DNA from: Octopus bimaculoides
Taxonomy: Eukaryota
Length of the DNA stretch: 36,237 bases
NCBI RefSeq assembly: GCF_001194135.2
Contig: NC_068983.1
Coordinates: forward strand, 152,114,273 to 152,150,509
Direction: 5' to 3'
This document shows positions 1-35,226 of this stretch, in pieces. The position numbers and the translations under genes are program-made. How positions within the stretch are numbered: the first letter of the stretch is position 1; each line of letters opens with the position of its first letter. The notes under the pieces were generated by a model. The model was not told the origin of the DNA and ran no database searches. It saw nothing but the letters and a program-made list of their open reading frames with translations.

Positions 1-1799
1 TATATATATCCAAAGTTTTAAATTTAAATTTAAGAGAGAGATTTGACGCTAATATCCATTATTAATGTAATTTATTCCTATGTCAACATTTCTGTATAAA
101 GCTATATTTGACCGTCAAATTTAAGTCAAACATATAAGTTGCCTTACATGTCTTCAGGGAATACATTTGAGAACAAACAAAAAAACCTAACAAAAGTCAA
201 AAATAGGAGATCAATATATATATATCCTAAAAAGGAAATATGCACATCGAGAGGTGGATTCAAATCCTTTCTCTTAGCACGAAAATTACCAACAGCAACA
301 TAAATGAATAGGTTCAGATTTAGATTCATAACTTGGAATTATAAATTACAAATATTTTTTCAAAATGCACCAAAAATCAATGTTTGCAAAAAAAGAAATC
401 TTATAATGTGTCCCAACACTGTACAACCTAGAATATTGTAAATAGATATAATATTTAATCAATGTTAATTCTCTAAATGAAGTATTAACAGTAACTGCAC
501 GATAAAGTGTAGTATATTGCCACTTAAGTGTGGCTGACCCCTNNNNNNNNNNCAAAATCAAACAGAATGAAAAACAACTCCAGGAATGTATGTTACAATA
601 CACATATGTTATGCAAAACTGGACCCTGCTCATGTTTTTTTCATGTGGCTGGGGCCATTATAAATACAAGCACAATCTTATTTAGCCGGAATACAAATTA
701 CTGATATTAGAATTGAATCTAGTTGTGTGCACCTGTGAAACGGAATAGATAAATGTATCAGGGATAGATATTAAGCTAACACATCTATCAATTCAACTTT
801 TGTTCTCTCTGCGCGGAGATTTCCTCCAAAAATTGCATAATTATATTTAGATTCATCCTATCAAATAATTTATATTCCTCTCAGATATTCGTTGTTGAGC
901 TCTGACATATTTTGAAAAAAAATCTCGAGTATTTTTTAGAACATTTATAATTTATAACATCAATCATATGTTGAATCTAAACTTGTTTGATGCTCTTCGT
1001 TTTAAGTTATTTACACACATATAGAAAATATTCAAATTCAATAACAGTGGCATTTTAAATACAACATGATTAGAAGACAAGCTGTTTTCCATATATACAA
1101 ATATAAAACTGGATGATAAAACAGCAAAAAAACGGAAAATGCATAGCGGAAATTCTACAAAGGAAAATAAATCTCTCTTCCCACACACGAAGATAAATTC
1201 TGTAGCCTCTTACAAGAGACATCTCAGCCTAGATCAAATTACACTCTTCAATCTCGATAGTAACTTGCACTTACAACCGAAATATAACAGAAAGTTTAAA
1301 AAGTCCGTATTCAGACTAATCTACCAATCCTCATAATGCTGAGATATCTTATAAGAAAGACAAAAGAACTACAAACATCAATAATAACCTCCAAGATACA
1401 CCCCGAAGCGGATACGACAAACATGATTGCACATACAGCAACAAGCAATTATTTAACACAGCCTGAAATAAACTCTGCATGACTAAAAGAATAACAGAGC
1501 AGTATTAAAGGGTGAGAAGAATAGACATTTATAATCACGGATAAAAAAAAAAAACAAGTACGTTGCAAAAATTATTTTTTCAGCAACAAAAATGAAATTA
1601 TGCCGATTCAGAAAAAAATTAAATATTATTCAATTGTAAATTAAAACTGATAAAGTAATAACTTTGGTAAACACAAACACCAAAAATAGGGTCAGCTCAG
1701 CATCGTGACATTGATAGAGGTTTCATCCCGACACCTATCTACGAAACAATAAAAGTGTATGAACAAAATTAAGTCTCGCTAAACCTTAAACTTTCCAAT

Positions 1800-2480
1800 A
1801 AATGCACCAGCGTATAAAATCACTAACAAATAATACGCAACGGACAGATAAAGTATACAGCCATTCGAAGACTTGCATAATATCGAAGCAGATTCCACTG
1901 AAGGCGTCAACATCTTCACCAAAAAAGCAGAAAAGTCTGTTTAGAAAAGTTGTAGTACAAAAAAGAACAGAAGCTGTAGTATACAGACTATAGTTTAGAA
2001 ACTATATTAAACTTTTAATAAAAACAGTCAACAATAAAACCATTTAAAGGCAGTAAGTCCTTAAAAGGGGTAATCTTTTGTTCGCCCAAAGGGAAGTTAT
2101 TTAAGTAAGAATATAGACAATCTATGAGTCCTCATTAGGGCTCACGTTCATTATATTCTTTGTTGTTACTATTATAAACAATGAGGTATCTAGATACTTA
2201 ATGTAGGATATTATCCAGTTATGTGGACAATATACTCCTCGTTGTAATGGACAAACTGGAAAACCTGGAGATATTTGAAGAGACCAACACCGTACTAAAA
2301 TACAACATTCAGAACAACTAAAAATATAACTTCTGCTAATGGCTTTATTTTTAGACGTAAATATTCGAATATACAAGTATTACATCAAACCCAAATGCAC
2401 TAAAGGTATAAGTATATGCCTCTACTTACATGGCGACATTGAATGTAAATGGTGCAGTGTAATATACAATGTATGGTAAA
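1800..2480 (+). mobile_element. Decayed Penelope-like element (PLE) reverse transcriptase relic with stops and frameshifts; element probably extends further on both sides
   Basis: Manual translation gives PLE RT motifs in the right order across frames: KSLFRKVVVQKRTEAVVYRL (~1931-1990; cf. SLFTNVP..T...I..RL), SSLGLTFIIFF (~2128; cf. MGSPLGPTFANIF), SYVDNILLVV (YVD at 2220; cf. YVDD), FLDVNI (2348), YIKP and CLYLHGDIEC...SVI (cf. KPT...CL..DSECP..YK.SVI). Family match is from memory of PLE consensus motifs. Confidence 0.72.
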
Positions 2481-3651
2481 ATTACGTTGGAGAAGAGCAT
2501 TTAGATTCCCTTCGTACGTAGAGCACCAGGAATAGAAATATACGAAATAAAACAAACTTCAATCAACGACGGAAATTCCGAAAAATAACGGACCAAGCAA
2601 CAGAAAAATAAATTCGCAAATAAAATACAGAAATGCATCATATAACCACATCTATTAAAAGCACAGAAATTACTAATAAAATTAACTACAATATGAACAA
2701 AGAAAATGCCGTCAATCTCATGGAAAGACACACAGTGCCTTACACTGAACCATAAACTAACACTAGAATTTATTCCTAAAGCACTAGAATTATAAACTTT
2801 CTTGATAACAAACTAGAAGAATGAAAATACGCAAACAAACAATTATTGAACGATGTACATAACAAAATATGATTGCTAAAACGAAAGTTGTATACTTTGT
2901 AAATCCTATTAGCTATAAAAGAAAGATTTTCTCCCGCCATCCCATCATGTATTTATTACAAAAAGCAATAGCAATGCACTGCATTATGCAAAACAAAAAA
3001 AACACTTGATAAGAAAACATTGCAAAACAACATGCCTAAATTATACAAAATTTCTCACAAAATAATCACAAACACAATGCACTATCAACTAAATAACTGT
3101 AGAATATTCATACACCGAATATTTATGTCTTGACCACATTTAGTCGCTTTAATGACAAATTACTCATTCTTTCCTCAAATTCTAATATTGACTTTGTGCT
3201 GATGTTAAAAATCACAATTTATCATTGTTGTTATGTTGAGAAATACTCTAGCATTTGTGCGGTACCTGTGCACATACTAGATGACTACACATACTAGATG
3301 ACTAGATACTAGATGACTAGTATGACTTTAAAAAAAAGGTTTTGCTGCTATTTCTAGTATGTCAGTGACCACATAGTGGCTTTACTAATACGCATTTTAA
3401 ATTTATGGCATGTAATGAACGCTACCTCTTTTATAATTCAGTTTTGTATTCGTCTATATTACACGCCTAAGAACAAATTGTTAGTTTCGTCCACACCAAC
3501 TTTGATTGCAGTGAAATATGTTCTGTTCGAATAAGGATTATAAATCCTGGGACAAAGCACCCGCTATATTTAAACTAAAATTTTACTGTGGATGAGTTAG
3601 GTGTTGTTTTACATTTTGTTTATTTCATGTACCAATGGTGTTAATAATCAT

Positions 3652-3850
3652 TTCTACTATAGGCAAAGGCCTGAAATTTTGGAAGTGGGGGTTAGTCGGC
3701 AATATCGCCCCCAGAGCTTAACTGGTATCTGTTTTATCGACCTCGGAAGGATGAAAAGCAAAGTTGACCTTGGTGGAATTTGAACTCAGAACGTAAGAAG
3801 CGCTAAATATTTCACTCGCCGTGCTAACCATTTTGCCAGCTCGCCGCCTT
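3652..3850 (-). mobile_element. tRNA-derived SINE, family A (AAGGCGGCGAGCTGGCAGAA head)
   Basis: Reverse complement reads aaggcggcgagctggc...gagttcaaattcc (B-box-like)...gtcgataaaa...cccc...aaaatttcaggccttt, matching the other family A copies in the window. Confidence 0.9.
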
Positions 3851-3872
3851 AAACCAATGGCTTTAATAATGG

Positions 3873-4044
3873 TTTCAAATTTTGGCACAAGGACAGCAAT
3901 TTCAGGGAAGGAGTAAGTCGATTACATTGACTCCAGAATTCAACTAGTACTTATTTTATCGACCCCGAAAAGATGTAAGGCAAAGTCGGCCCCGCAGAAC
4001 AGAATTTGATTTCAGAACGTAAAGACGGAAGAAATGCCGCTAAG
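3873..4044 (-). mobile_element. SINE family A, 5'-truncated at the inner breakpoint of the left arm
   Basis: Same core as other family A copies; ends abruptly at ...ccgctaag (4044). Confidence 0.88.
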
Positions 4045-5171
4045 ATAGTTTTTATGATTATGACGGCCTTGGTAGTGGTGTTAGTGACGCATTAAATGCG
4101 ATAGTATGCGTCACGTGACGAGACAGAATAGACATTGTGAGAAATTGTTGCTGATGGTAATAGTTCTAGTGCAGGTGGTGCGCCCTCTGACGCTTGAATA
4201 CTTTCAACAGAATACATCCTACAGCAAACATTGCGGACAGTTCTTAGGGTATTAGCATCACTTCTCTCCTTCCTTCCTTCCACCATCCTTACAAGCCCCA
4301 TAAAGGATCATCCTCCACTGATTAAATCGTATCAAAATATGAAGGGAAAACAAACAAAAAAGCTGTAATCCTTGACGATTTTAATAATGATGCAGTTAAT
4401 TGTGAAAGTGTATGTCGTCACGTAGTTGGAAAGAGTAATGGCGGCTGTCATACTTTTGATAATAATAATAACAATGGCGGAGACATTGGAAGTTTTTGTT
4501 TGTGTTTGGTGATGGACGGTAAGTTGGTGCAAGCATGAAGTTGCAGGAGAGGGATGGGAAAGTTGGCAGCCATGTTTATTTTATATTTTTTGTTTTTATA
4601 ACATATATTTCATAGTCACACCTCTTTGCTTTTTCTCTAAATATCCCTAGCCCAACTCACATATAATCAAATCAACCCTCTCAGCAATCAACCGACCACC
4701 CACTCCTTAATATTTTTTAAATATTTTCTACATTGTATCTACTATGTTCAGTTCTTTTAACGACCCCCTATGCGCTGCACAATCATATCTCGCTCCCAAC
4801 GACCACCCAACGCATTATTGTACAACCACATCACACGTCGTAATGATTACTTAACGAACAAACAAGGCCACGAACTTGTAGAAACAATTTATAATCGTTT
4901 GAATTAACTCTACCGCTTCCTTCACGAGTAGATGGCTGGCGGCTGTGATATCACCACAGTTAAGATTACCACCGACGTTAACTCTAAGGCCTGCTACTAG
5001 CAGAACTACGAGCCTGCGAGGGAGCCTCTTGCGGTCACTAGAAGTACTTGAAATAGCTGAAACGTCTCAGGATTGTGAAGCAAACCTCTTTATCAATGGG
5101 CCATGCTTCCGATTCATTTACATGAATATCATTACCACCACTACCAGAGGAATAAAACTCTTAACATTATT

Positions 5172-5343
5172 AGAATCGTTAGCACATCGGACAAAGTGCT
5201 TAGCGGGATTTCTTCCGTCTTTACGTTCTGAATTCAAATTCTGTTCTGCGAGTCGATAAAATAAGTACCAGTTGAATACTGGAGTCAAGGTAATCGACTT
5301 ACTCCTTCCTTGAAATTGCTGTCCTTGCGCCAAAATTTGAAAC
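5172..5343 (+). mobile_element. SINE family A, mirror partner of 3873-4044, with a ~29-bp internal deletion
   Basis: Shares the diagnostic caaattctgttctgcg with the left-arm copy. Confidence 0.88.
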
Positions 5344-5364
5344 TATTATTAAAGACATCGGTTT

Positions 5365-5557
5365 AAGGCGGTGAGCTTGCAGAATAATTAGCACACCGAG
5401 TGAAATGTTTAGCAGTCCTTACGTTCTGAGTTCAAATTCCGCCATGGTCAACTTTGCCTTTCATCCTTCAGGGTCGATAAAATAGATACCAGTTAAGCTC
5501 TGAGGTCGATATTATCGACTATCCCCCTCTCCCAAAATTTCATGCCTTTTGCCTATA
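5365..5557 (+). mobile_element. SINE family A, mirror partner of 3652-3850
   Basis: Shares the diagnostics gagtgaaat, gataccagttaagctctg and cgatatt with the left-arm copy. Confidence 0.9.
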
Positions 5558-5942
5558 GTTGTTGACACTTCATCGATTACGACGTCAAGGGTTTCAGTTG
5601 ATCCGATCAACGGAACAGCCTACTCGTGAAATTAACGTGCAAGTGGCTGAGCACTCCACAGACACGTGTACCCTTAATGTAGTTTTCGGGGATATTCAGC
5701 GTGACACAGTGTGACAAGGCTGACTCTTTGAATTACAGGCACAACAGAAACAGGAAGTAAGAGTGAGAGAAAGTTGTGGTGAAAGAGTATAGCAGGGTTC
5801 ACCACCATCCCCTGCAGGATGCCTCGTGGAGCTTTAGGTGTTTTCGCTCAATAAACACTCACAACGCCCGGTCTGGGAATCGAAACCGCGATCCTATGAT
5901 CACGAGTCCGTTGCCCTAACCACTGGGCCATTGCGCCTCCAC
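5558..5942 (-). mobile_element. Full-length tRNA-derived SINE, family C (385 bp), with 9-bp TSD
   Basis: Reverse complement head GTGGAGGCGCAATGGCCCAGTGGTTAGGG...GGTTTCGATTCCC has A and B boxes; tail is (CAA)n. TSD ttgcctata at 5549-5557 and 5943-5951. Confidence 0.93.
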
Positions 5943-6645
5943 TTGCCTATAATAGAAATGAATATTTATACCATTGGCACAAAATAAACAAAATGTAAAA
6001 CAACACCTAACTCATCCACAGTAAAATTTTAGTTTAAATATAGCGGATGCTTTGTCCCAGGATTTATAATCTTTATTCGAACAGAACATATTTCACTGCA
6101 ATCAAAAGTTGGTGTGGACGAAACTAACAATTTGTTCTTAGGCGTGTAATATAGACGAATACAAAACTGAATTATAAAAGAAGTAGCGTTCATTACATGC
6201 CAGAAATTTAAAATGCGTCTTAGTAAAGCCACTATGTGGTCACTGACATACTAGAAATAGCAGCAAAACCTTTTTTTTAAAGTCAAACTAGTCATCTAGT
6301 ATCTAGTCATCTAGTATGTGTAGTCATCTAGTATGTGTAGTCATCTAGTATGTGCACAGGTACCGCACAAATGCTAGCGTATTTCTCAACATAACAACAA
6401 TGATAAATGGTGATTTTTAACGTCAGCACAAAGTCAATATTAGAATTTGAGGAAAGAATGTGTAATTTGTCATTAAAGAGACTAAATGTGGTCAAGACAT
6501 AAATATTCGGTGTTGCTCCAGCATGACCGCAGCGTTAGGATCATGCAATTCAGATACTCTACTGCACAGGTACTTTGTTTTTCGATCCTGGGATGATGGC
6601 AAAGTTAGCTTCAGTGGGATTTGAACCCGATACAGAGCAGGAACA

Positions 6646-6970
6646 AATTCTTTTCTACTCTAGGCGCAAGGGCTGAAATTTTGGAAGAGGGGGCTAGTCG
6701 ATTAGATCGAACCGAGTATGCAACTGGTACTTAATTTATTGACCTCAAAGGATGAAAGGCAGAATTTGAACTCAGAAAGTAAAGACAGACGAAATACCGC
6801 AACACATTTCGCCCGGCGTGCAAACCTTTCTCTTCTACTCTAGGCACAAGGCCCGAAATTTGGGGGGAGGGAGCCAGTCGATTAGATCGACCCCAGTACG
6901 CAACTGGTACTTAATTTATTGACCTCAAAGGATGAAAGGCAAAGTCGACCTCGCCGGAATTTGAACGCAG
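6646..6970 (-). mobile_element. Two tandem partial SINE family A copies
   Basis: Two units starting ttctactctaggc(g/a)caagg at ~6653 and ~6833, each with gtcgattagatcga and caactggtacttaattt. Confidence 0.9.
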
Positions 6971-7217
6971 TGCGTGAAATAGAAAATAAATGGAAAAAAA
7001 ATATATATATATGACATAGTTTCGCATAGTTTCCGTAAACCAAATTATTTCAGAAGGAATTATTCGGTCCGGAGTACCGACTGATCCCAGACCCACAATA
7101 TTTCCAAGCGTACTTCTTAACCACACACCCTTGTTTGCGCGTACTCTGAGGTATTTTTCATACACCATACTTTCTTAGTCTTGTTTACGAGTTTTCTTAC
7201 GTATATATTACGATTTT

Positions 7218-7399
7218 GAGGCGGCGGTATTTCATCTATCTTTATGTATTGAGTTCAAATTCTGCCGAGGTAGGCTTTGCCTTTCAGTCTTTCATCTTTT
7301 CATGGTCAATAAAATAAGTACCAGTCGAGCACCGGGGTCGATGTAAACGATTCCTCCATCCCCCAAAATTGCTTTCCTGATGCCAAAATGTGAAACAAT
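7218..7399 (+). mobile_element. SINE family A copy, internally deleted near the head
   Basis: gaggcggcgg...gagttcaaattctgccgagg...ataagtaccagt...cccccaaaattgc...tgccaaaatgtgaaac. Confidence 0.85.
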
Positions 7400-7452
7400 T
7401 ACATTACGTCTTCCTTAAGTCTGTCTTATTATGTTTCCTTACTACATGCTAT

Positions 7453-7812
7453 ATCTTCTTTTCTAACATAGGCACAAGGCACGAAATTTTGGGGGAGAGA
7501 GCCAATCGATTAGATCGACCCCAGTACGCAATTGGTACTTAATTTATGGACCCCGTAAGGATGAAAGGCAAAGTCGACCTCGGCGGAATTTGAATTCAGA
7601 ACGTAACGGCAGACGAAATAACACTAAGCATTTCGCCTAGCGTGCTAACGTTTCTACAAGCTCGCCAATTTCTACATGCTATACATTCTTTTCTAGTCTA
7701 CACACAAGGCCCAAAATTTTGGGGGAGAAGGCCAGTCGATTAGATCGACCCCAGTACACAACCGCTAAGCAATTCGCCCGGCGTGCTAACGTTTCTGCCA
7801 TCTCGCCGCCTT
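7453..7812 (-). mobile_element. Two tandem SINE family A copies separated and flanked by the same 11-bp direct repeat
   Basis: ctacatgctat at 7442-7452, 7672-7682 and 7813-7823. The second copy has a large internal deletion. Confidence 0.92.
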
Positions 7813-8169
7813 CTACATGCTATTTATTAAAACGTTCCAACGGATTTCTTTATTGCGTCTCGAGATGTCCATCCTTTTCCCTGTTTTATTTATTCCTACT
7901 GTTTCTTTGTATGAATTTATTTGTTACGCTTCTTATAGCTATTAGTAATCGTTGTTTGCTTTACACAGAAGCATGTCTTTGTCCAGCCTTCCATCTTTAA
8001 CTCCCCTTCACCATTGTCCATTCTTGTTAAATATTTGCATGACGATGTTCCTTCCCAGACATTATTAACATTATGATTTGTCAGGAATTAAATGCAAAAA
8101 TACAAATTAAATTAAAAAGAAAGAAAAAGAGGCAAGTAATAAATGAACTTAATATAGAAAACACACAAT

Positions 8170-8187
8170 ATCATCATCGTTTCTAAT

Positions 8188-8227
<40 letters not shown>

Positions 8228-8297
8228 GAATGATGATGATGATGATGATGATGATGATAATAATAATAATGATGATGATTATGATGATGATATGATT

Positions 8298-8334
<37 letters not shown>

Positions 8335-8621
8335 GAATGATGATGATGACGATGATGATGATGAAGAAGAAGAAGAAGAAGAAGAAGAAGAAGAAGAAGA
8401 AGAAGAAGAAGAAAAAGAAGATGATGTTTTTTATTTACCACAAGTGCACAAGTGTCGACAAAATATATAGGATACACGATCACCATCGTTGTCGTCGTCT
8501 TTATTATTACCATGATGATCATCATCATCACCTTCAGCAGCAATTGTACCAACACCCCCACTCCACCGTCATCATCATCGCCATCATCGTCATTATCATC
8601 ATCGTCGTCGTCGTCGTCCTT

Positions 8622-8667
<46 letters not shown>

Positions 8668-8830
8668 CCATCCTTATTATCATCTTCAACATCATCATCA
8701 TCACCATCCTTATTATCATCTTCAACATCATCATCATCATCCTTACTATCATCTTCAACATCATCATCATCATCATCCTTATTATCATCTTCAATATCAA
8801 CATCATCATCATCACCATCCTTATCATTAT
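8170..8830. repeat. Compound trinucleotide microsatellite: (ATG)n and (AAG)n, then (CAT/CGT)n with a higher-order ~33-36-bp unit
   Basis: Read directly; explains the poly-M/K/S/I/H ORFs. Confidence 0.97.
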
Positions 8831-9011
8831 AACAGCCAGCTGCTGTTAAACAATTTTGTTGTCCTTTGTCGTCCTACTTTTTTTTTTCTTTGAGTTTTGA
8901 TTTCGTAGTGAGTAGTTCAACTTTTCGAGGCGTTTAATTTGGTAAACTTACTTTAACCCAGTTGAAATTTGAGATGGTATAATGCGTGTAACTCGCTCAC
9001 GGTCGAAGTCC

Positions 9012-9068
9012 TTGATTGATTGATTGATTGATTCATTCATTCTTTCATTCATTCATTCATTCATTCAT
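9012..9068. repeat. (GATT)n-(CATT)n microsatellite
   Basis: Read directly. Confidence 0.95.
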
Positions 9069-9295
9069 CCTCCTGTATGTCTTATTCTCCCACATTCTCA
9101 AGTTATCTTCTGCTTCTTCCTCTGCATAGCCACCATATTACCTCCCTTAGTTTCACTGTTCTTCCTTACGGCTAGCTAACTATTACCTCTGTTATTACGT
9201 ATTTCTTTTTTTGTTTATACTTTGTTTGTATTGACCTCAATGCCTCAAACATACCATTTTGCTTGTTCTACATGTAACAATATTTTCAGCAGTTT

Positions 9296-9398
9296 TTAAT
9301 TCCGCCGAGGTCGAATTTGCCTTTCATCTGTTCGGAGTCGATAAATTAAGTACCAATTACGTAATGGAATCGATCTAATCGACTGGCCCCACTCCCCA
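9296..9398 (+). mobile_element. SINE family A 3' fragment
   Basis: aattccgccgaggtcgaatttgcctttcatc...gtcgataaattaagtacc...cgatctaatcgactggcccc. Confidence 0.85.
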
Positions 9399-9414
9399 AG
9401 ATATATCATGATAA

Positions 9415-9570
9415 AGGCGCAGGTATGATCATGCGGTTAAAAAGTTCGCTTCGAAACTCTTGGTTCCCGGTTTGATCCGACATCTCGTCTCCTTGGAAGA
9501 GAATTTGCTGACACCAACCCGGGTTAAGCTATTCATATGCCCAAAACGTGGCTCGGGAAATTGTGCAGAA
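9415..9570 (+). mobile_element. Highly degraded SINE family B copy
   Basis: aggcgcaggtatgatcatgcggttaaaaagttcgcttcg...ggttcccggtttgatcc resembles the 13583 head. Confidence 0.55.
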
Positions 9571-10420
9571 GCCCATTGCATCCACATACAGGGGATAGAG
9601 TATAACTTTAAATACAATGAGATCATTTTGTTTTACACTTTTCACGCTGATTCCACCTTGAGTACCACATGATGGTTACACGTGTCTGTGGAATATTTAG
9701 TTACACATAAATCGAGAACATAGCTCATTTGAACTGAGTGCCCATTGGCTATGGTGTAATGCAGTTTGGTCGAGGTATGGTGCAGAAACCATAACAAGAA
9801 TATGTATAGATGTAAAGGGTAAAGAGTCTCAAAAGCTGTGTGTTTATGGAAGAGAGGATGTTGCATGAGTATTAATCGAAAAATGTTTGTGTGCGTTTGT
9901 CTAAGGCGCATATGAGTGAGGGTGTATACACGCACATGAGCGTATATGTGAGTATATCTATCTTTAGCATTTATTGTTTGAGAAAAGTGTTTTGGTTTCT
10001 AATGTGGACTATAATTGAGCTCTATGGTGTATCCGGGTTACATTTAATATAAACGTTAGACATTTAAGGAGTCTCTCGTAAGAAATTAATGTGGGGAATC
10101 ATATAAGATATACGTGCATATGGACATCATATTCTATATATGATAACTATTAATGTGTGCGCAAAAATATTTTGGCTGTTAATTACCAGATAAATCTACG
10201 ATGAAGAATCAACCTGCTTTAGCCCTACAAGCTTTTTGTACGTTGTAGGCAACATTAACCAATATAGCCTTCTCCTTTTAAAGAAATGGTGTGTAATCTG
10301 AGGGAGCATTGATTGCTATTTCTTATAGGTCAAACGACTACGTAAGCACGACGAGCATCTAGCAAAATATACGCATTTGTATGTATGTGTGTGTGAGAGA
10401 GAGGGGGAGCGCGCGCGTGT

Positions 10421-10468
<48 letters not shown>

Positions 10469-34125: not shown

Positions 34126-35226
34126 CAACATATTAGTCCATGATGTATCCTCGGATGAAGCAAAATCTAATTTGTGGGACTCATGTCTTTAGAAAAATAT
34201 ATTGTATTACATTTGATTCAAATGAGTAGTACGCAGTATGTTATCATTTACAAAAATATTTCTTGTGGATGCATAGTTAGTCACTATACGTGAGTAGTGT
34301 TAATCTGACTTCAATTCAATTGATGCTGCTCGACTAGTCATAGCATATAACCAAATAACTTAATGGTAAATGAAAAAATTAAATTGTGAATGACGTATTG
34401 GCGTTAAGCATTTCAAAAATTAAATTCATATGAACACAAAAGTAGACACAATGGCCCCTAGAAAAATTAATTCGTGAAATTTCTACAGTGAGAAAAAAAT
34501 CTGTGAAAGAATCGACTGAAAAATTTCAAATAAGATGTGATAAAAACATGTCACAAAGTCTCAGATAGTTAGTACATGTGTGTGAGCGTATTTACGTATT
34601 CACCCATATACACATCCATTAATACATGTACACGTAGACACATTCGTATACATTTATACGTACATATGAAACATCCGCAGTTATATTTATATGTGTGCGT
34701 GTGCAAATGTACACACATAGATACACTCACACAAATAGACACACGCACACATAGATGTATATGTATAAGCAATNNNNNNNNNNNNNNNNNNNNNNNNNNN
34801 NNNNNNNNNNNNNNNNNNNNNNNNNNNNNNNNNNNNNNNNNNNNNNNNNNNNNNNNNNNNNNNNNNNNNNNNNNNNNNNNNNNNNNNNNNNNNNNNNNNN
34901 NNNNNNNNNNNNNNNNNNNNNNNNNNNNNNNNNNNNNNNNNNNNNNNNNNNNNNNNNNNNNNNNNNNNNNNNNNNNNNNNNNNNNNNNNNNNNNNNNNNN
35001 NNNNNNNNNNNNNNNNNNNNNNNNNNNNNNNNNNNNNNNNNNNNNNNNNNNNNNNNNNNNNNNNNNNNNNNNNNNNNNNNNNNNNNNNNNNNNNNNNNNN
35101 NNNNNNNNNNNNNNNNNNNNNNNNNNNNNNNNNNNNNNNNNNNNNNNNNNNNNNNNNNNNNNNNNNNNNNNNNNNNNNNNNNNNNNNNNNNNNNNNNNNN
35201 NNNNNNNNNNNNNNNNNNNNNNTGTG

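What the first reader, a model, noticed from the sequence alone, without database searches (positions are those of the whole stretch)
3112..6513. 3.4-kb genomic palindrome: ~930-bp inverted arms around a 1.15-kb spacer
3112-4044 is the reverse complement of 5199-6513 once one later insertion is removed. Each arm has ~540 bp of non-SINE sequence plus two pre-existing SINE copies with shared diagnostic mutations. There is no transposase in the spacer and no TSD at the outer ends. This points to a local inverted duplication (template switch or fold-back repair) rather than a classical TIR transposon. If transcribed it would give ~0.9 kb of near-perfect dsRNA; in DNA it could extrude or recombine, and flip the spacer.
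Basis: partly seen in the sequence, partly recalled or inferred. Interest (0 to 1): 0.7.

Follow-up and report, generated by a model that had tools for sequence, protein, structure and literature searches.

The report
Local inverted duplication, already decaying
About 0.93 kb of non-coding, repeat-rich eukaryotic DNA, including two old SINE-like copies, was copied in reverse 1.15 kb away; this is an ordinary, decaying inverted duplication with no sign of a gene or a mobile element.

Summary
Window 3112-4044 is the reverse complement of 5199-6513 (BLAST bit scores 841 and 381, E = 0 and 6e-108). The match holds once a 384-bp element in the right arm is removed. The spacer is 1154 bp.

Each arm holds about 530 bp of window-unique sequence plus the same two SINE-like copies. 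The junctions are identical, and 32 and 37 non-consensus sites are shared.

- **Insertion after the duplication:** the 384-bp element has a 10-bp target-site duplication, and the left arm keeps the empty site.
- **Polarity of the inner edge:** it cuts SINE2. The right copy runs 28 bp further into the spacer; the left copy stops at 4044. So 4044|4045 is a rearrangement junction and 5198|5199 is ancestral.
- **Not a transposon on internal evidence:** there is no target-site duplication, no ORF or Pfam hit, and no second copy in the window.

Best reading: a single DNA-level inverted duplication, by fold-back or template switch, or by a staggered-break micro-inversion. It is now neutral and decaying.

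Arm divergence is uneven: 2.1%, 13.3% and 5.5%. This is unexplained; arm-to-arm gene conversion is my favoured guess.

Genome-wide copy number, read support and expression could not be tested. This is a known kind of structure and of low interest.

The parts
3112..4044 (.). Left arm (933 bp). It is the rearranged copy at its inner end.
   Evidence: Reverse complement of 5199-6513.
3112..3639 (.). Left arm, window-unique non-SINE part. Low arm-to-arm divergence: 12 mismatches in 526 positions.
   Evidence: No other match in the window. Divergence. No excess RNA structure (z = -0.5).
3271..3319 (.). 17-bp minisatellite CACATACTAGATGACTA, 3 copies. The partner at 6289-6354 has 4 copies.
   Evidence: TRF and the alignment.
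3643..3851 (-). SINE1, left copy. The SINE sense strand is the minus strand.
   Evidence: nhmmer with an HMM built from the other SINE copies in the window: model positions 13-233, E = 5.6e-47. It shares an 11-bp deletion and 32 non-consensus sites with the right copy.
3657..3666 (.). Empty target site CTATAGGCAA (= TTGCCTATAG on the other strand) for the 384-bp insertion seen in the right arm.
   Evidence: Alignment and sequence.
3865..4044 (-). SINE2, left copy. It is cut off at model position 189 by the junction 4044|4045.
   Evidence: nhmmer model positions 13-189. The 28 bases after 4044 match the SINE consensus at 7 of 28 positions (my reading).
3963..3990 (.). 28 bp of SINE2 kept only in the left arm and deleted in the right arm. 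The segment lies between the imperfect direct repeats CGACCCCG and CGGCCCCG.
   Evidence: Alignment. The segment is present in the other SINE copies.
4045..5198 (.). Spacer (1154 bp), unique within the window. Its last 28 bp (5171-5198) are the continuation of the right-hand SINE2.
   Evidence: No repeat hits. No Pfam hit and no long ORF. Only a sub-threshold snoRNA-like hit at 4046-4147.
5171..5348 (+). SINE2, right copy. It runs across the inner edge of the inverted repeat at 5198|5199.
   Evidence: nhmmer model positions 15-217. 5171-5241 also pairs with another SINE at 7586-7656 (I9). The 28 bp past the edge match the consensus at 20 of 28 positions and carry the same subfamily marks as the body.
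5199..6513 (.). Right arm (1315 bp, or 931 bp without the insertion). It keeps the ancestral inner junction.
5364..5562 (+). SINE1, right copy.
   Evidence: nhmmer model positions 23-233, E = 1.3e-50.
5549..5558 (.). Target-site duplication, copy 1: TTGCCTATAG.
   Evidence: Sequence. The TSD scan finds 9 exact bases; 5 of 2000 random position pairs reach 9 or more.
5559..5942 (-). 384-bp SINE-like element of a different family, inserted after the duplication. Its head carries TGGCCCAGTGG and GGTTTCGATTCC, which read like pol III A and B boxes by eye.
   Evidence: Absent from the left arm and flanked by the TSD. Fragments of it lie at 9635-9692 and 21521-21548. Neither ARAGORN nor Rfam calls it a tRNA.
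5943..5952 (.). Target-site duplication, copy 2: TTGCCTATAA (one mismatch).
   Evidence: Sequence.
5953..6513 (.). Right arm: the end of the SINE1 tail and the window-unique part, including the minisatellite at 6289-6354.

Best explanation
This is a real, single-event, DNA-level inverted duplication in non-coding, SINE-rich eukaryotic DNA.

**Before the event.** The ancestral locus already held ~530 bp of unique sequence followed by two old SINE-like insertions, SINE1 and SINE2.

**The event.** One rearrangement produced a reverse-oriented second copy of ~0.93 kb, 1.15 kb away.
- The right arm keeps the ancestral link to the spacer: SINE2 runs across 5198|5199.
- The left arm ends in a breakpoint inside SINE2, at 4044|4045.

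**Mechanism I commit to (about 0.5).** This is an inferred step. A broken or stalled 3' end at the left edge of the spacer folded back, or switched to the opposite strand, and copied 5199 -> 6513. It was then rejoined to the left flank at 3111|3112. This is a fold-back or double template-switch event.

**Main alternative (about 0.25).** A 1.15-kb micro-inversion made by breaks staggered by ~0.93 kb and filled in. It gives the same final map.

**After the event.** These changes are shown by the sequence.
- A 384-bp SINE-like element inserted into the right arm, with a 10-bp TSD.
- 28 bp were lost from the right SINE2 between short direct repeats.
- A 17-bp minisatellite changed copy number.
- 51 substitutions accumulated.

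**Function.** Nothing indicates a function. The structure is most likely neutral and decaying. Its only predictable activities are arm-to-arm recombination or gene conversion, and a long imperfect RNA hairpin if the locus happens to be transcribed.
For: - **Arms beyond chance:** collinear arms with E = 0 and 6e-108.
- **Common origin of the nested SINEs:** the unique/SINE1 and SINE1/SINE2 junctions are identical, an 11-bp deletion is shared, and 32 (SINE1) and 37 (SINE2) non-consensus sites are shared. Private changes in SINE1 are 16 (left) and 10 (right).
- **Filled versus empty site:** the 384-bp insertion has the TSD TTGCCTATA(G/A) on the right, and the single site is intact on the left. 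This shows two physically distinct copies that evolved separately.
- **Polarity:** the left SINE2 stops at model position 189. The right SINE2 runs to position 217, 28 bp past the repeat edge, with the same subfamily marks.
- **Against transposition:** no TSD around the whole unit or around either arm (2-4 bp, within the random range). No ORF or Pfam domain. No second copy in the window.
- **Size fits known processes:** fold-back duplications have spacers of 766-70,466 bp (PMC3907307). Staggered-break duplications reach about 1.9 kb (PMC1885836).
Against: - **Copy number unknown:** only 36 kb of this genome could be examined, so the unit could still be repeated elsewhere.
- **Draft assembly:** the window is a short-read-style scaffold with ten N-runs, and read support could not be checked.
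- **No visible microhomology:** none is seen at 3111|3112 or 4044|4045. Without the ancestral sequence, any microhomology would be hidden inside the arms.
- **Sub-mechanism unresolved:** scanning the two reconstructed ancestral junctions for SINE continuity gave nothing for either model.
- **Uneven divergence:** 2.1%, 13.3% and 5.5% along the arms (LR = 28.8 for two rates against one; Fisher p = 2.6e-7). One duplication followed by uniform neutral decay does not predict this.
Confidence: 0.8

Rival explanations
1. Staggered-break micro-inversion. Two single-strand nicks ~0.93 kb apart on one side, and a break on the other side of a 1.15-kb segment, were filled in and rejoined with the segment inverted. 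This left the stretch between the nicks duplicated in inverted orientation at both ends. It is a rival for the mechanism, not for what the structure is.
For: The model predicts L-X-S'-X'-R with one ancestral inner junction and one novel one. That is what is seen: 5198|5199 is ancestral and 4044|4045 is novel. Blunt junctions without TSD or visible microhomology fit end joining. Duplications of 46 bp to ~1.9 kb at inversion breakpoints are documented in Drosophila (PMC1885836).
Against: The model predicts that 3111|3112 is ancestral. Base composition switches abruptly exactly there: AT skew goes from +0.33 to -0.11. This is weak evidence. The reconstructed ancestral junction rc(4045)|6514 shows no continuity of the degenerate SINE at 6566-6637. 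A 0.93-kb stagger for so small an inversion requires long unwinding, a difficulty the authors of the model raise themselves.
Confidence: 0.25
2. Long-TIR or foldback-type DNA transposon. In this reading 3112-6513 is one copy of a non-autonomous mobile element whose terminal inverted repeats happen to contain SINE sequence.
For: It has long inverted termini around a non-coding middle. Genome-wide copy number could not be measured.
Against: The best TSD at the outer ends is 2 bp, below the random median. There is no transposase or any Pfam hit. There is no other copy or fragment in the window. The inner repeat edge falls inside a SINE that continues on one side only. Both 'TIRs' would need the same two nested SINE insertions with the same private mutations.
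Confidence: 0.04
3. Assembly artefact. One locus, or two haplotypes of it, was assembled twice in opposite orientation in a draft short-read scaffold.
For: The window is a gap-rich draft with ten N-runs. The arms contain high-copy SINE sequence, and no reads could be examined.
Against: - The structure lies inside one gap-free contig, 553-12271.
- The arms are not identical: 51 substitutions, a 28-bp indel and a minisatellite difference.
- One arm has a 384-bp insertion with a TSD while the other keeps the empty site.
- The 4044|4045 junction goes from SINE to non-SINE sequence. It is therefore not a mis-join through a shared repeat.
- 13% divergence in SINE1 is far above ordinary allelic variation.
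Confidence: 0.07
4. RNA-mediated copy. A read-through transcript started in SINE2, ran through SINE1 and the unique part, and was reverse-transcribed by LINE machinery. It inserted nearby in reverse, truncated at its 5' end.
For: The left copy lacks the first part of SINE2, as a 5'-truncated retrocopy would. SINE-like elements were active here after the duplication.
Against: There is no TSD around the left arm (3 bp, chance level). There is no A-rich or LINE-type tail at the 3112 end, and no T-run terminator at 6513 in the source copy.
Confidence: 0.03
5. Functional hairpin-RNA locus. The palindrome is transcribed, and its dsRNA stem is used as an siRNA source or an ADAR substrate. The outer 520 bp would be kept alike by selection.
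For: The predicted fold of 3112-6513 pairs 863 of 933 left-arm bases with the right arm on either strand. MFE is -1790 and -1829 kcal/mol, and the longest perfect helices are 77 and 98 bp. The outer block is much better conserved between arms than the inner one.
Against: There are no expression data. The arm's unique part has no structure or coding signal of its own. The stem is interrupted by a 384-nt insertion and is decaying. Better conservation of the outer block is equally explained by gene conversion or by assembly noise in the SINE parts.
Confidence: 0.05

Closest known systems
Fold-back / template-switch inverted duplications with a single-copy spacer (human constitutional and tumour rearrangements; PMC3907307)
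   Same: Two inverted copies are separated by a non-duplicated spacer of about a kilobase; reported spacers are 766-70,466 bp, and here it is 1154 bp. There is no TSD. One junction lies in or next to an interspersed repeat, as in 3 of the 21 human junctions.
   Different: The human cases duplicate megabases and come with terminal deletions, translocations or ring chromosomes. Here only 0.93 kb is duplicated, and a second junction (3111|3112) returns to the same chromosome. The diagnostic 2-8 bp inverted microhomology cannot be scored without the ancestral sequence.
Inverted duplications flanking inversions made by staggered breaks (Drosophila melanogaster group; PMC1885836)
   Same: Ancestrally single-copy sequence is duplicated in inverted orientation at the two ends of a segment. 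Duplicate size is within the reported range (46 bp to ~1.9 kb). Duplicates decay by substitutions and small deletions; mean identity in Drosophila is about 88%.
   Different: The segment between the copies is only 1.15 kb, not a chromosomal inversion. Whether it is actually inverted relative to the ancestor is unknown.
Large sex-chromosome palindromes maintained by arm-to-arm gene conversion (PMC8600007, PMC8327919; abstracts seen)
   Same: The architecture is arm-spacer-arm. Uneven arm divergence here, 2.1% in the long uninterrupted outer block, could reflect arm-to-arm conversion.
   Different: Those palindromes have arms longer than 10 kb, more than 99% identity, and carry testis-expressed genes. 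These arms are 0.93 kb, 94% identical overall, and gene-free.
Foldback and other long-TIR DNA transposons
   Same: Long inverted termini around a non-coding centre.
   Different: No TSD, no transposase, no other copies in the window, and the inner repeat edge cuts a SINE.
Inverted SINE pairs and hairpin-RNA loci that give dsRNA (for example inverted Alu pairs; PMC5080714, abstract seen)
   Same: If transcribed, the arms, which include inverted SINE copies, would form a long dsRNA stem.
   Different: The pairing comes from a segmental duplication, not from two independent SINE insertions. No evidence of transcription is available.

Membership tests
Local inverted segmental duplication (palindrome with spacer) | Two reverse-complementary arms far beyond chance | tested here: met
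   841 and 381 bits, E = 0 and 6e-108; 851 of 902 positions identical.
Local inverted segmental duplication (palindrome with spacer) | Arms are copies of one composite ancestral segment, with the same nested repeats, junctions and private mutations | tested here: met
   The unique/SINE1 and SINE1/SINE2 junctions are shared, as are an 11-bp deletion and 32 and 37 non-consensus sites.
Local inverted segmental duplication (palindrome with spacer) | A breakpoint interrupts a pre-existing element in one copy only | tested here: met
   SINE2 ends at model position 189 on the left and runs to position 217 on the right.
Local inverted segmental duplication (palindrome with spacer) | Exactly two copies in the genome | not testable with these tools
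   No further copy in the 36-kb window. No collection here holds the genome.
Local inverted segmental duplication (palindrome with spacer) | Both copies physically present and not an assembly artefact | tested here: inconclusive
   Indirect support only: a gap-free contig, arms that differ, and a filled site opposite an empty site. No reads were available.
Class II TIR / foldback transposon | Target-site duplication flanking the outer ends | tested here: not met
   Best match is 2 bp with +/-6 bp slack. The random median is 3 bp, and the control insertion gives 9 bp.
Class II TIR / foldback transposon | Transposase ORF (autonomous copy) or multiple copies with the same ends (non-autonomous) | tested here: not met
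   No Pfam hit, and the ORFs are short. No other copy in the window. Genome-wide copies were not testable.
Fold-back inverted duplication (PMC3907307) | Single-copy spacer between the inverted copies, usually up to a few kb | tested here: met
   The spacer is 1154 bp and unique in the window. The reported range is 766-70,466 bp.
Fold-back inverted duplication (PMC3907307) | Short inverted (micro)homology between the spacer end and the start of the duplicated region in the ancestral sequence | not testable with these tools
   This needs the pre-duplication sequence. In the present sequence, no homology extends beyond the arms at 4044|4045 or 5198|5199.
Staggered-break inversion with flanking inverted duplication (PMC1885836) | The segment between the copies is inverted relative to the ancestor, and one outer junction is ancestral | tested here: inconclusive
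   No outgroup. Composition switches at 3111|3112. The SINE-continuity test across the reconstructed junctions was negative for both models.
LINE-mediated retrocopy | TSD around the copy and a 3' A-rich or LINE-type tail | tested here: not met
   The best TSD around the left arm is 3 bp. There is no tail at the 3112 end.
Gene-conversion-maintained palindrome (sex-chromosome type) | Arms longer than 10 kb and more than 99% identical | tested here: not met
   Arms are 0.93 kb and 94.3% identical.
Hairpin-RNA / dsRNA-producing locus | Transcription across both arms, and small RNAs or editing | not testable with these tools
   Only the folding potential could be computed: 863 arm-arm pairs.

The most novel reading that the evidence does not exclude
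The palindrome is not inert. It is transcribed into a long hairpin whose ~520-bp, ~98%-matched outer stem is kept alike by selection or by frequent arm-to-arm conversion. The stem would serve as a dsRNA source (endogenous siRNA, or a hub for A-to-I editing). Alternatively, the arms act as an inversion switch for the 1.15-kb spacer.
Probability: 0.05. Interest if true: 0.5.

Novelty: new member of a known kind. Interest (0 to 1): 0.2.

Why it matters
Taken alone it matters little. Kilobase-scale inverted duplications with a spacer are a familiar by-product of break repair and replication errors in repeat-rich eukaryotic genomes.

The locus is still a tidy worked example. The nested SINE copies date and orient the event. 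One arm keeps the ancestral junction. A later insertion provides a filled site and an empty site within a single genome.

It could be useful in three ways:
- As a marker for checking assembly quality.
- As a natural test of how far a 384-bp heterology limits arm-to-arm gene conversion.
- As a candidate source of long dsRNA, if RNA data exist for this species.

Tried and rejected
**Searches for outside copies (all empty):**
- Exact-product look-ups of an arm ORF and of the spacer ORF.
- Protein search with the longest clean ORF of the window, 33438-33914.
- Exact 26-mer from the arm and 21-mer from the SINE core, in viral contigs and in metagenome contigs.
- SINE k-mers in the paper library.

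As a result, neither the organism nor the genome-wide copy number was established. From memory only, the ~230-bp SINE-like repeat resembles repeats abundant in cephalopod genomes. This is a lead, not a test.

**RNA genes:**
- ARAGORN found no tRNA, and Rfam at gathering score found nothing.
- Permissive Rfam runs gave only sub-threshold hits. 'tRNA-derived' therefore rests on A/B-box-like motifs read by eye.
- Folding the unique part of the arm gave z = -0.5.

**Mechanism tests that did not discriminate:**
- Microhomology at the four junctions, by eye: none.
- SINE continuity across the reconstructed ancestral junctions: none.
- Base-composition continuity: only a weak hint that 3111|3112 is a novel junction.

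**Explanations of the uneven divergence that were tested:**
- CpG decay is rejected: only 7 of 39 SINE mismatches are in a CpG context.
- One-sided conversion or hypermutation is not supported: 16 private changes on the left against 10 on the right.
- 17 of the 26 private states in SINE1 also occur in other SINE copies. That is about what chance gives, so ectopic conversion or assembly bleed-through is neither supported nor excluded.

**Other:** The repeat finder on the whole window reported mainly N-runs and microsatellites.


Full report
**Context.** The window is a draft eukaryotic scaffold.
- It has ten N-runs of 10-881 bp, usually next to microsatellites, and 26-43% G+C.
- No tRNA or Rfam family is present at curated thresholds, and I found no recognisable coding sequence.
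- An HMM built from the repeat copies outside the finding detects about 21 copies or fragments of a ~230-bp SINE-like repeat.
- The organism was not identified (see Limits).

**Observation.** The inverted repeat is real and lies at the stated coordinates.
- 3112-3666 pairs with 6513-5943 (841 bits, E = 0).
- 3656-3963 pairs with 5559-5252 (381 bits, E = 6e-108).
- 3993-4044 pairs with 5250-5199.
- A global alignment joins these into one collinear match once 384 bp in the right arm are set aside.
- The arms are 933 bp and 1315 bp (931 bp without the insertion). The spacer is 1154 bp.
- 851 of 902 aligned positions are identical.
- It is the largest repeat pair in the window and sits inside one gap-free contig, 553-12271.

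**Anatomy of an arm.** From the outside in, each arm holds three parts.
- **Unique part:** about 530 bp found nowhere else in the window. It includes a 17-bp minisatellite.
- **SINE1:** left copy 3643-3851, right copy 5364-5562.
- **SINE2:** left copy 3865-4044, right copy 5171-5348. It belongs to a second subfamily.

The two arms share the unique/SINE1 and SINE1/SINE2 junctions and an 11-bp deletion in SINE1. They also share 32 (SINE1) and 37 (SINE2) sites that depart from the consensus of the other copies. The SINEs were therefore already in place, and already old, when the segment was duplicated. They are not independent insertions.

**Changes since the duplication.**
- **384-bp insertion.** A SINE-like element of another family lies at 5559-5942 on the minus strand. 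It is flanked by TTGCCTATAG (5549-5558) and TTGCCTATAA (5943-5952). The left arm keeps the single, unoccupied site at 3657-3666. In a TSD scan this insertion scores 9 exact bases, a value reached by 5 of 2000 random position pairs.
- **28-bp loss.** The right arm lacks 28 bp of SINE2 (left 3963-3990). The segment lies between the imperfect direct repeats CGACCCCG and CGGCCCCG, which reads like a slippage deletion.
- **Minisatellite.** It has 3 copies on the left and 4 on the right.
- **Substitutions.** There are 51: 28 transitions and 23 transversions.

The filled site opposite the empty site is the strongest internal argument that the arms are two physically separate copies with separate histories.

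**Polarity.** The inner edge of the repeat lies inside SINE2.
- The left copy stops at model position 189, at base 4044. The next 28 bases match the SINE consensus at 7 of 28 positions, which is random.
- The right copy continues to model position 217. It runs 28 bp past the repeat edge into the 'spacer' (5171-5198), matching at 20 of 28 positions. It carries the same subfamily marks as the body of SINE2 (also I9).

So 5198|5199 is an ancestral adjacency and 4044|4045 is a rearrangement junction.

**Outer ends.**
- No target-site duplication flanks the whole unit (best 2 bp), the left arm (3 bp) or the right arm (4 bp). With the same +/-6 bp slack, random position pairs give a median of 3 bp.
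- I see no microhomology at 3111|3112 or 4044|4045. Without the ancestral sequence, any microhomology would be counted as part of the arms.
- The left flank is strongly strand-asymmetric (AT skew +0.15 to +0.33 over 2.5 kb) and switches to -0.11 exactly at 3112. This hints weakly that 3111|3112 is also a novel junction.
- I reconstructed the ancestral junctions predicted by two models and scanned them with the SINE HMM. No repeat became continuous under either model.

**What it is not.**
- **Not a TIR or foldback transposon, on internal evidence.** There is no TSD, no ORF with a Pfam hit in the arms or spacer, and no other copy in the window. The inner edge cuts a SINE that continues on one side.
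- **Not a retrocopy.** There is no TSD around the left arm and no 3' tail.
- **Unlikely to be an assembly artefact.**
  - The contig is gap-free and the arms differ.
  - One arm has an insertion with a TSD.
  - The 4044|4045 junction runs from SINE into non-SINE sequence, so it is not a mis-join through a shared repeat.
  - Reads were not available, so I leave about 7% for this.

**Mechanism.** Two known processes give exactly this map.
- **(a) Fold-back or double template switch.**
  1. A 3' end at the left edge of the spacer pairs with, or switches to, the complementary strand.
  2. It copies 5199 -> 6513.
  3. It is rejoined to the left flank.

  Human fold-back duplications have single-copy spacers of 766-70,466 bp. 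Their junctions are often in inverted SINE or LINE pairs (PMC3907307).
- **(b) Staggered-break micro-inversion.** Nicks ~0.93 kb apart are filled in, and the 1.15-kb segment is rejoined in reverse. In Drosophila this leaves inverted duplicates of 46 bp to ~1.9 kb that then decay (PMC1885836).

Both predict one ancestral and one novel inner junction, as observed. They differ in which outer junction is ancestral, and that needs an outgroup. I put (a) at about 0.5 and (b) at about 0.25, on priors and the compositional hint at 3111|3112.

**An unexplained feature.** Divergence between the arms is not uniform.
- It is 2.1% over 3112-3630, 13.3% over 3631-3871 (SINE1 and its linker), and 5.5% over 3872-4044 (SINE2).
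- The best change-point is 3631, with a support interval of 3606-3640. LR = 28.8 for two rates against one, and a further 6.5 for three rates. Fisher p = 2.6e-7 for unique against SINE parts.
- CpG decay does not explain it: 7 of 39 SINE mismatches are in a CpG context.
- Private changes lie on both arms, 16 on the left and 10 on the right.

Three candidates remain:
- Arm-to-arm gene conversion keeps the long uninterrupted outer block alike, with the 384-bp insertion acting as a heterology barrier. This is my favoured guess, by analogy with known palindromes.
- Other SINE copies converted SINE1 ectopically.
- Short-read assembly noise inside a high-copy repeat.

**Consequences.**
- **RNA.** If transcribed, either strand of 3112-6513 is predicted to fold so that about 863 bases of one arm pair with the other. 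MFE is -1790 and -1829 kcal/mol, and the longest perfect helices are 77 and 98 bp. That is a long but imperfect stem with a 384-nt bulge, not 'near-perfect' dsRNA. There is no evidence of transcription.
- **No independent signal.** The unique part of the arm has no excess structure of its own (z = -0.5). No shuffle control could be computed for the spacer fold.
- **DNA.** Cruciform extrusion in duplex DNA is not expected with a 1.15-kb spacer (established knowledge, not tested). Homologous recombination between ~520 bp at ~98% identity could flip the spacer.

**Limits.** No collection available here contains this genome or a relative.
- Exact-product look-ups, a protein search, DNA pattern scans and sequence strings in the paper library all came back empty.
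- Copy number outside the 36-kb window, read support, spacer orientation in other individuals and expression are therefore untested.

**Verdict.** It is a new instance of a well-known kind of rearrangement, with no indication of function. Interest is low, at 0.2.

Noticed in passing
window 6640-6978, 7443-7818, 22416-23062, 30498-30910, 33807-34136: The ~230-bp SINE-like repeat often sits head-to-tail in pairs or triplets, with one copy starting inside the end of the next (nhmmer). This suggests insertion into earlier copies or small tandem duplications. The SINE1-SINE2 pair in the arms has the same layout.
   Followed up: partly
window 22402-22912 vs 30485-30803: A direct (not inverted) duplicate of a SINE array, 85-90% identical over ~500 bp and 8 kb apart. 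It could be a second small segmental duplication or a composite repeat unit.
   Followed up: no
window 553-3111: 2.5 kb with strong strand asymmetry (AT skew +0.15 to +0.33, GC skew down to -0.27) that ends abruptly at the left edge of the palindrome. There are no ORFs or repeats in it, and its nature is unknown.
   Followed up: partly
window 4046-4147: A sub-threshold C/D-box snoRNA-like match (Rfam snoZ118, 29.9 bits against a gathering score of 48, E = 0.02). It starts at the second base of the spacer and contains a 9-bp stem, GTGACGCAT...ATGCGTCAC. Probably chance.
   Followed up: no
window 32482-33911 (+): A run of four consecutive ORFs of 103-164 aa on one strand. They have no Pfam family above threshold and no homologue in the protein collection. 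This may be a decayed retroelement ORF.
   Followed up: partly
window 9635-9692 and 21521-21548: Short fragments similar to the 384-bp element that inserted into the right arm. That element therefore belongs to a dispersed family.
   Followed up: no
window 6566-6637: A degenerate fragment of the SINE-like repeat (model positions 92-167, E = 1e-6), 50 bp to the right of the right arm. Both of its ends are truncated.
   Followed up: partly
window 12272-12883, 14843-15723, 26792-27072, 28286-28517, 30018-30260, 34774-35222 and four shorter runs: Assembly gaps (N-runs), mostly bordered by TA/CA-type microsatellites. They produce spurious 'repeats' in repeat finders.
   Followed up: yes
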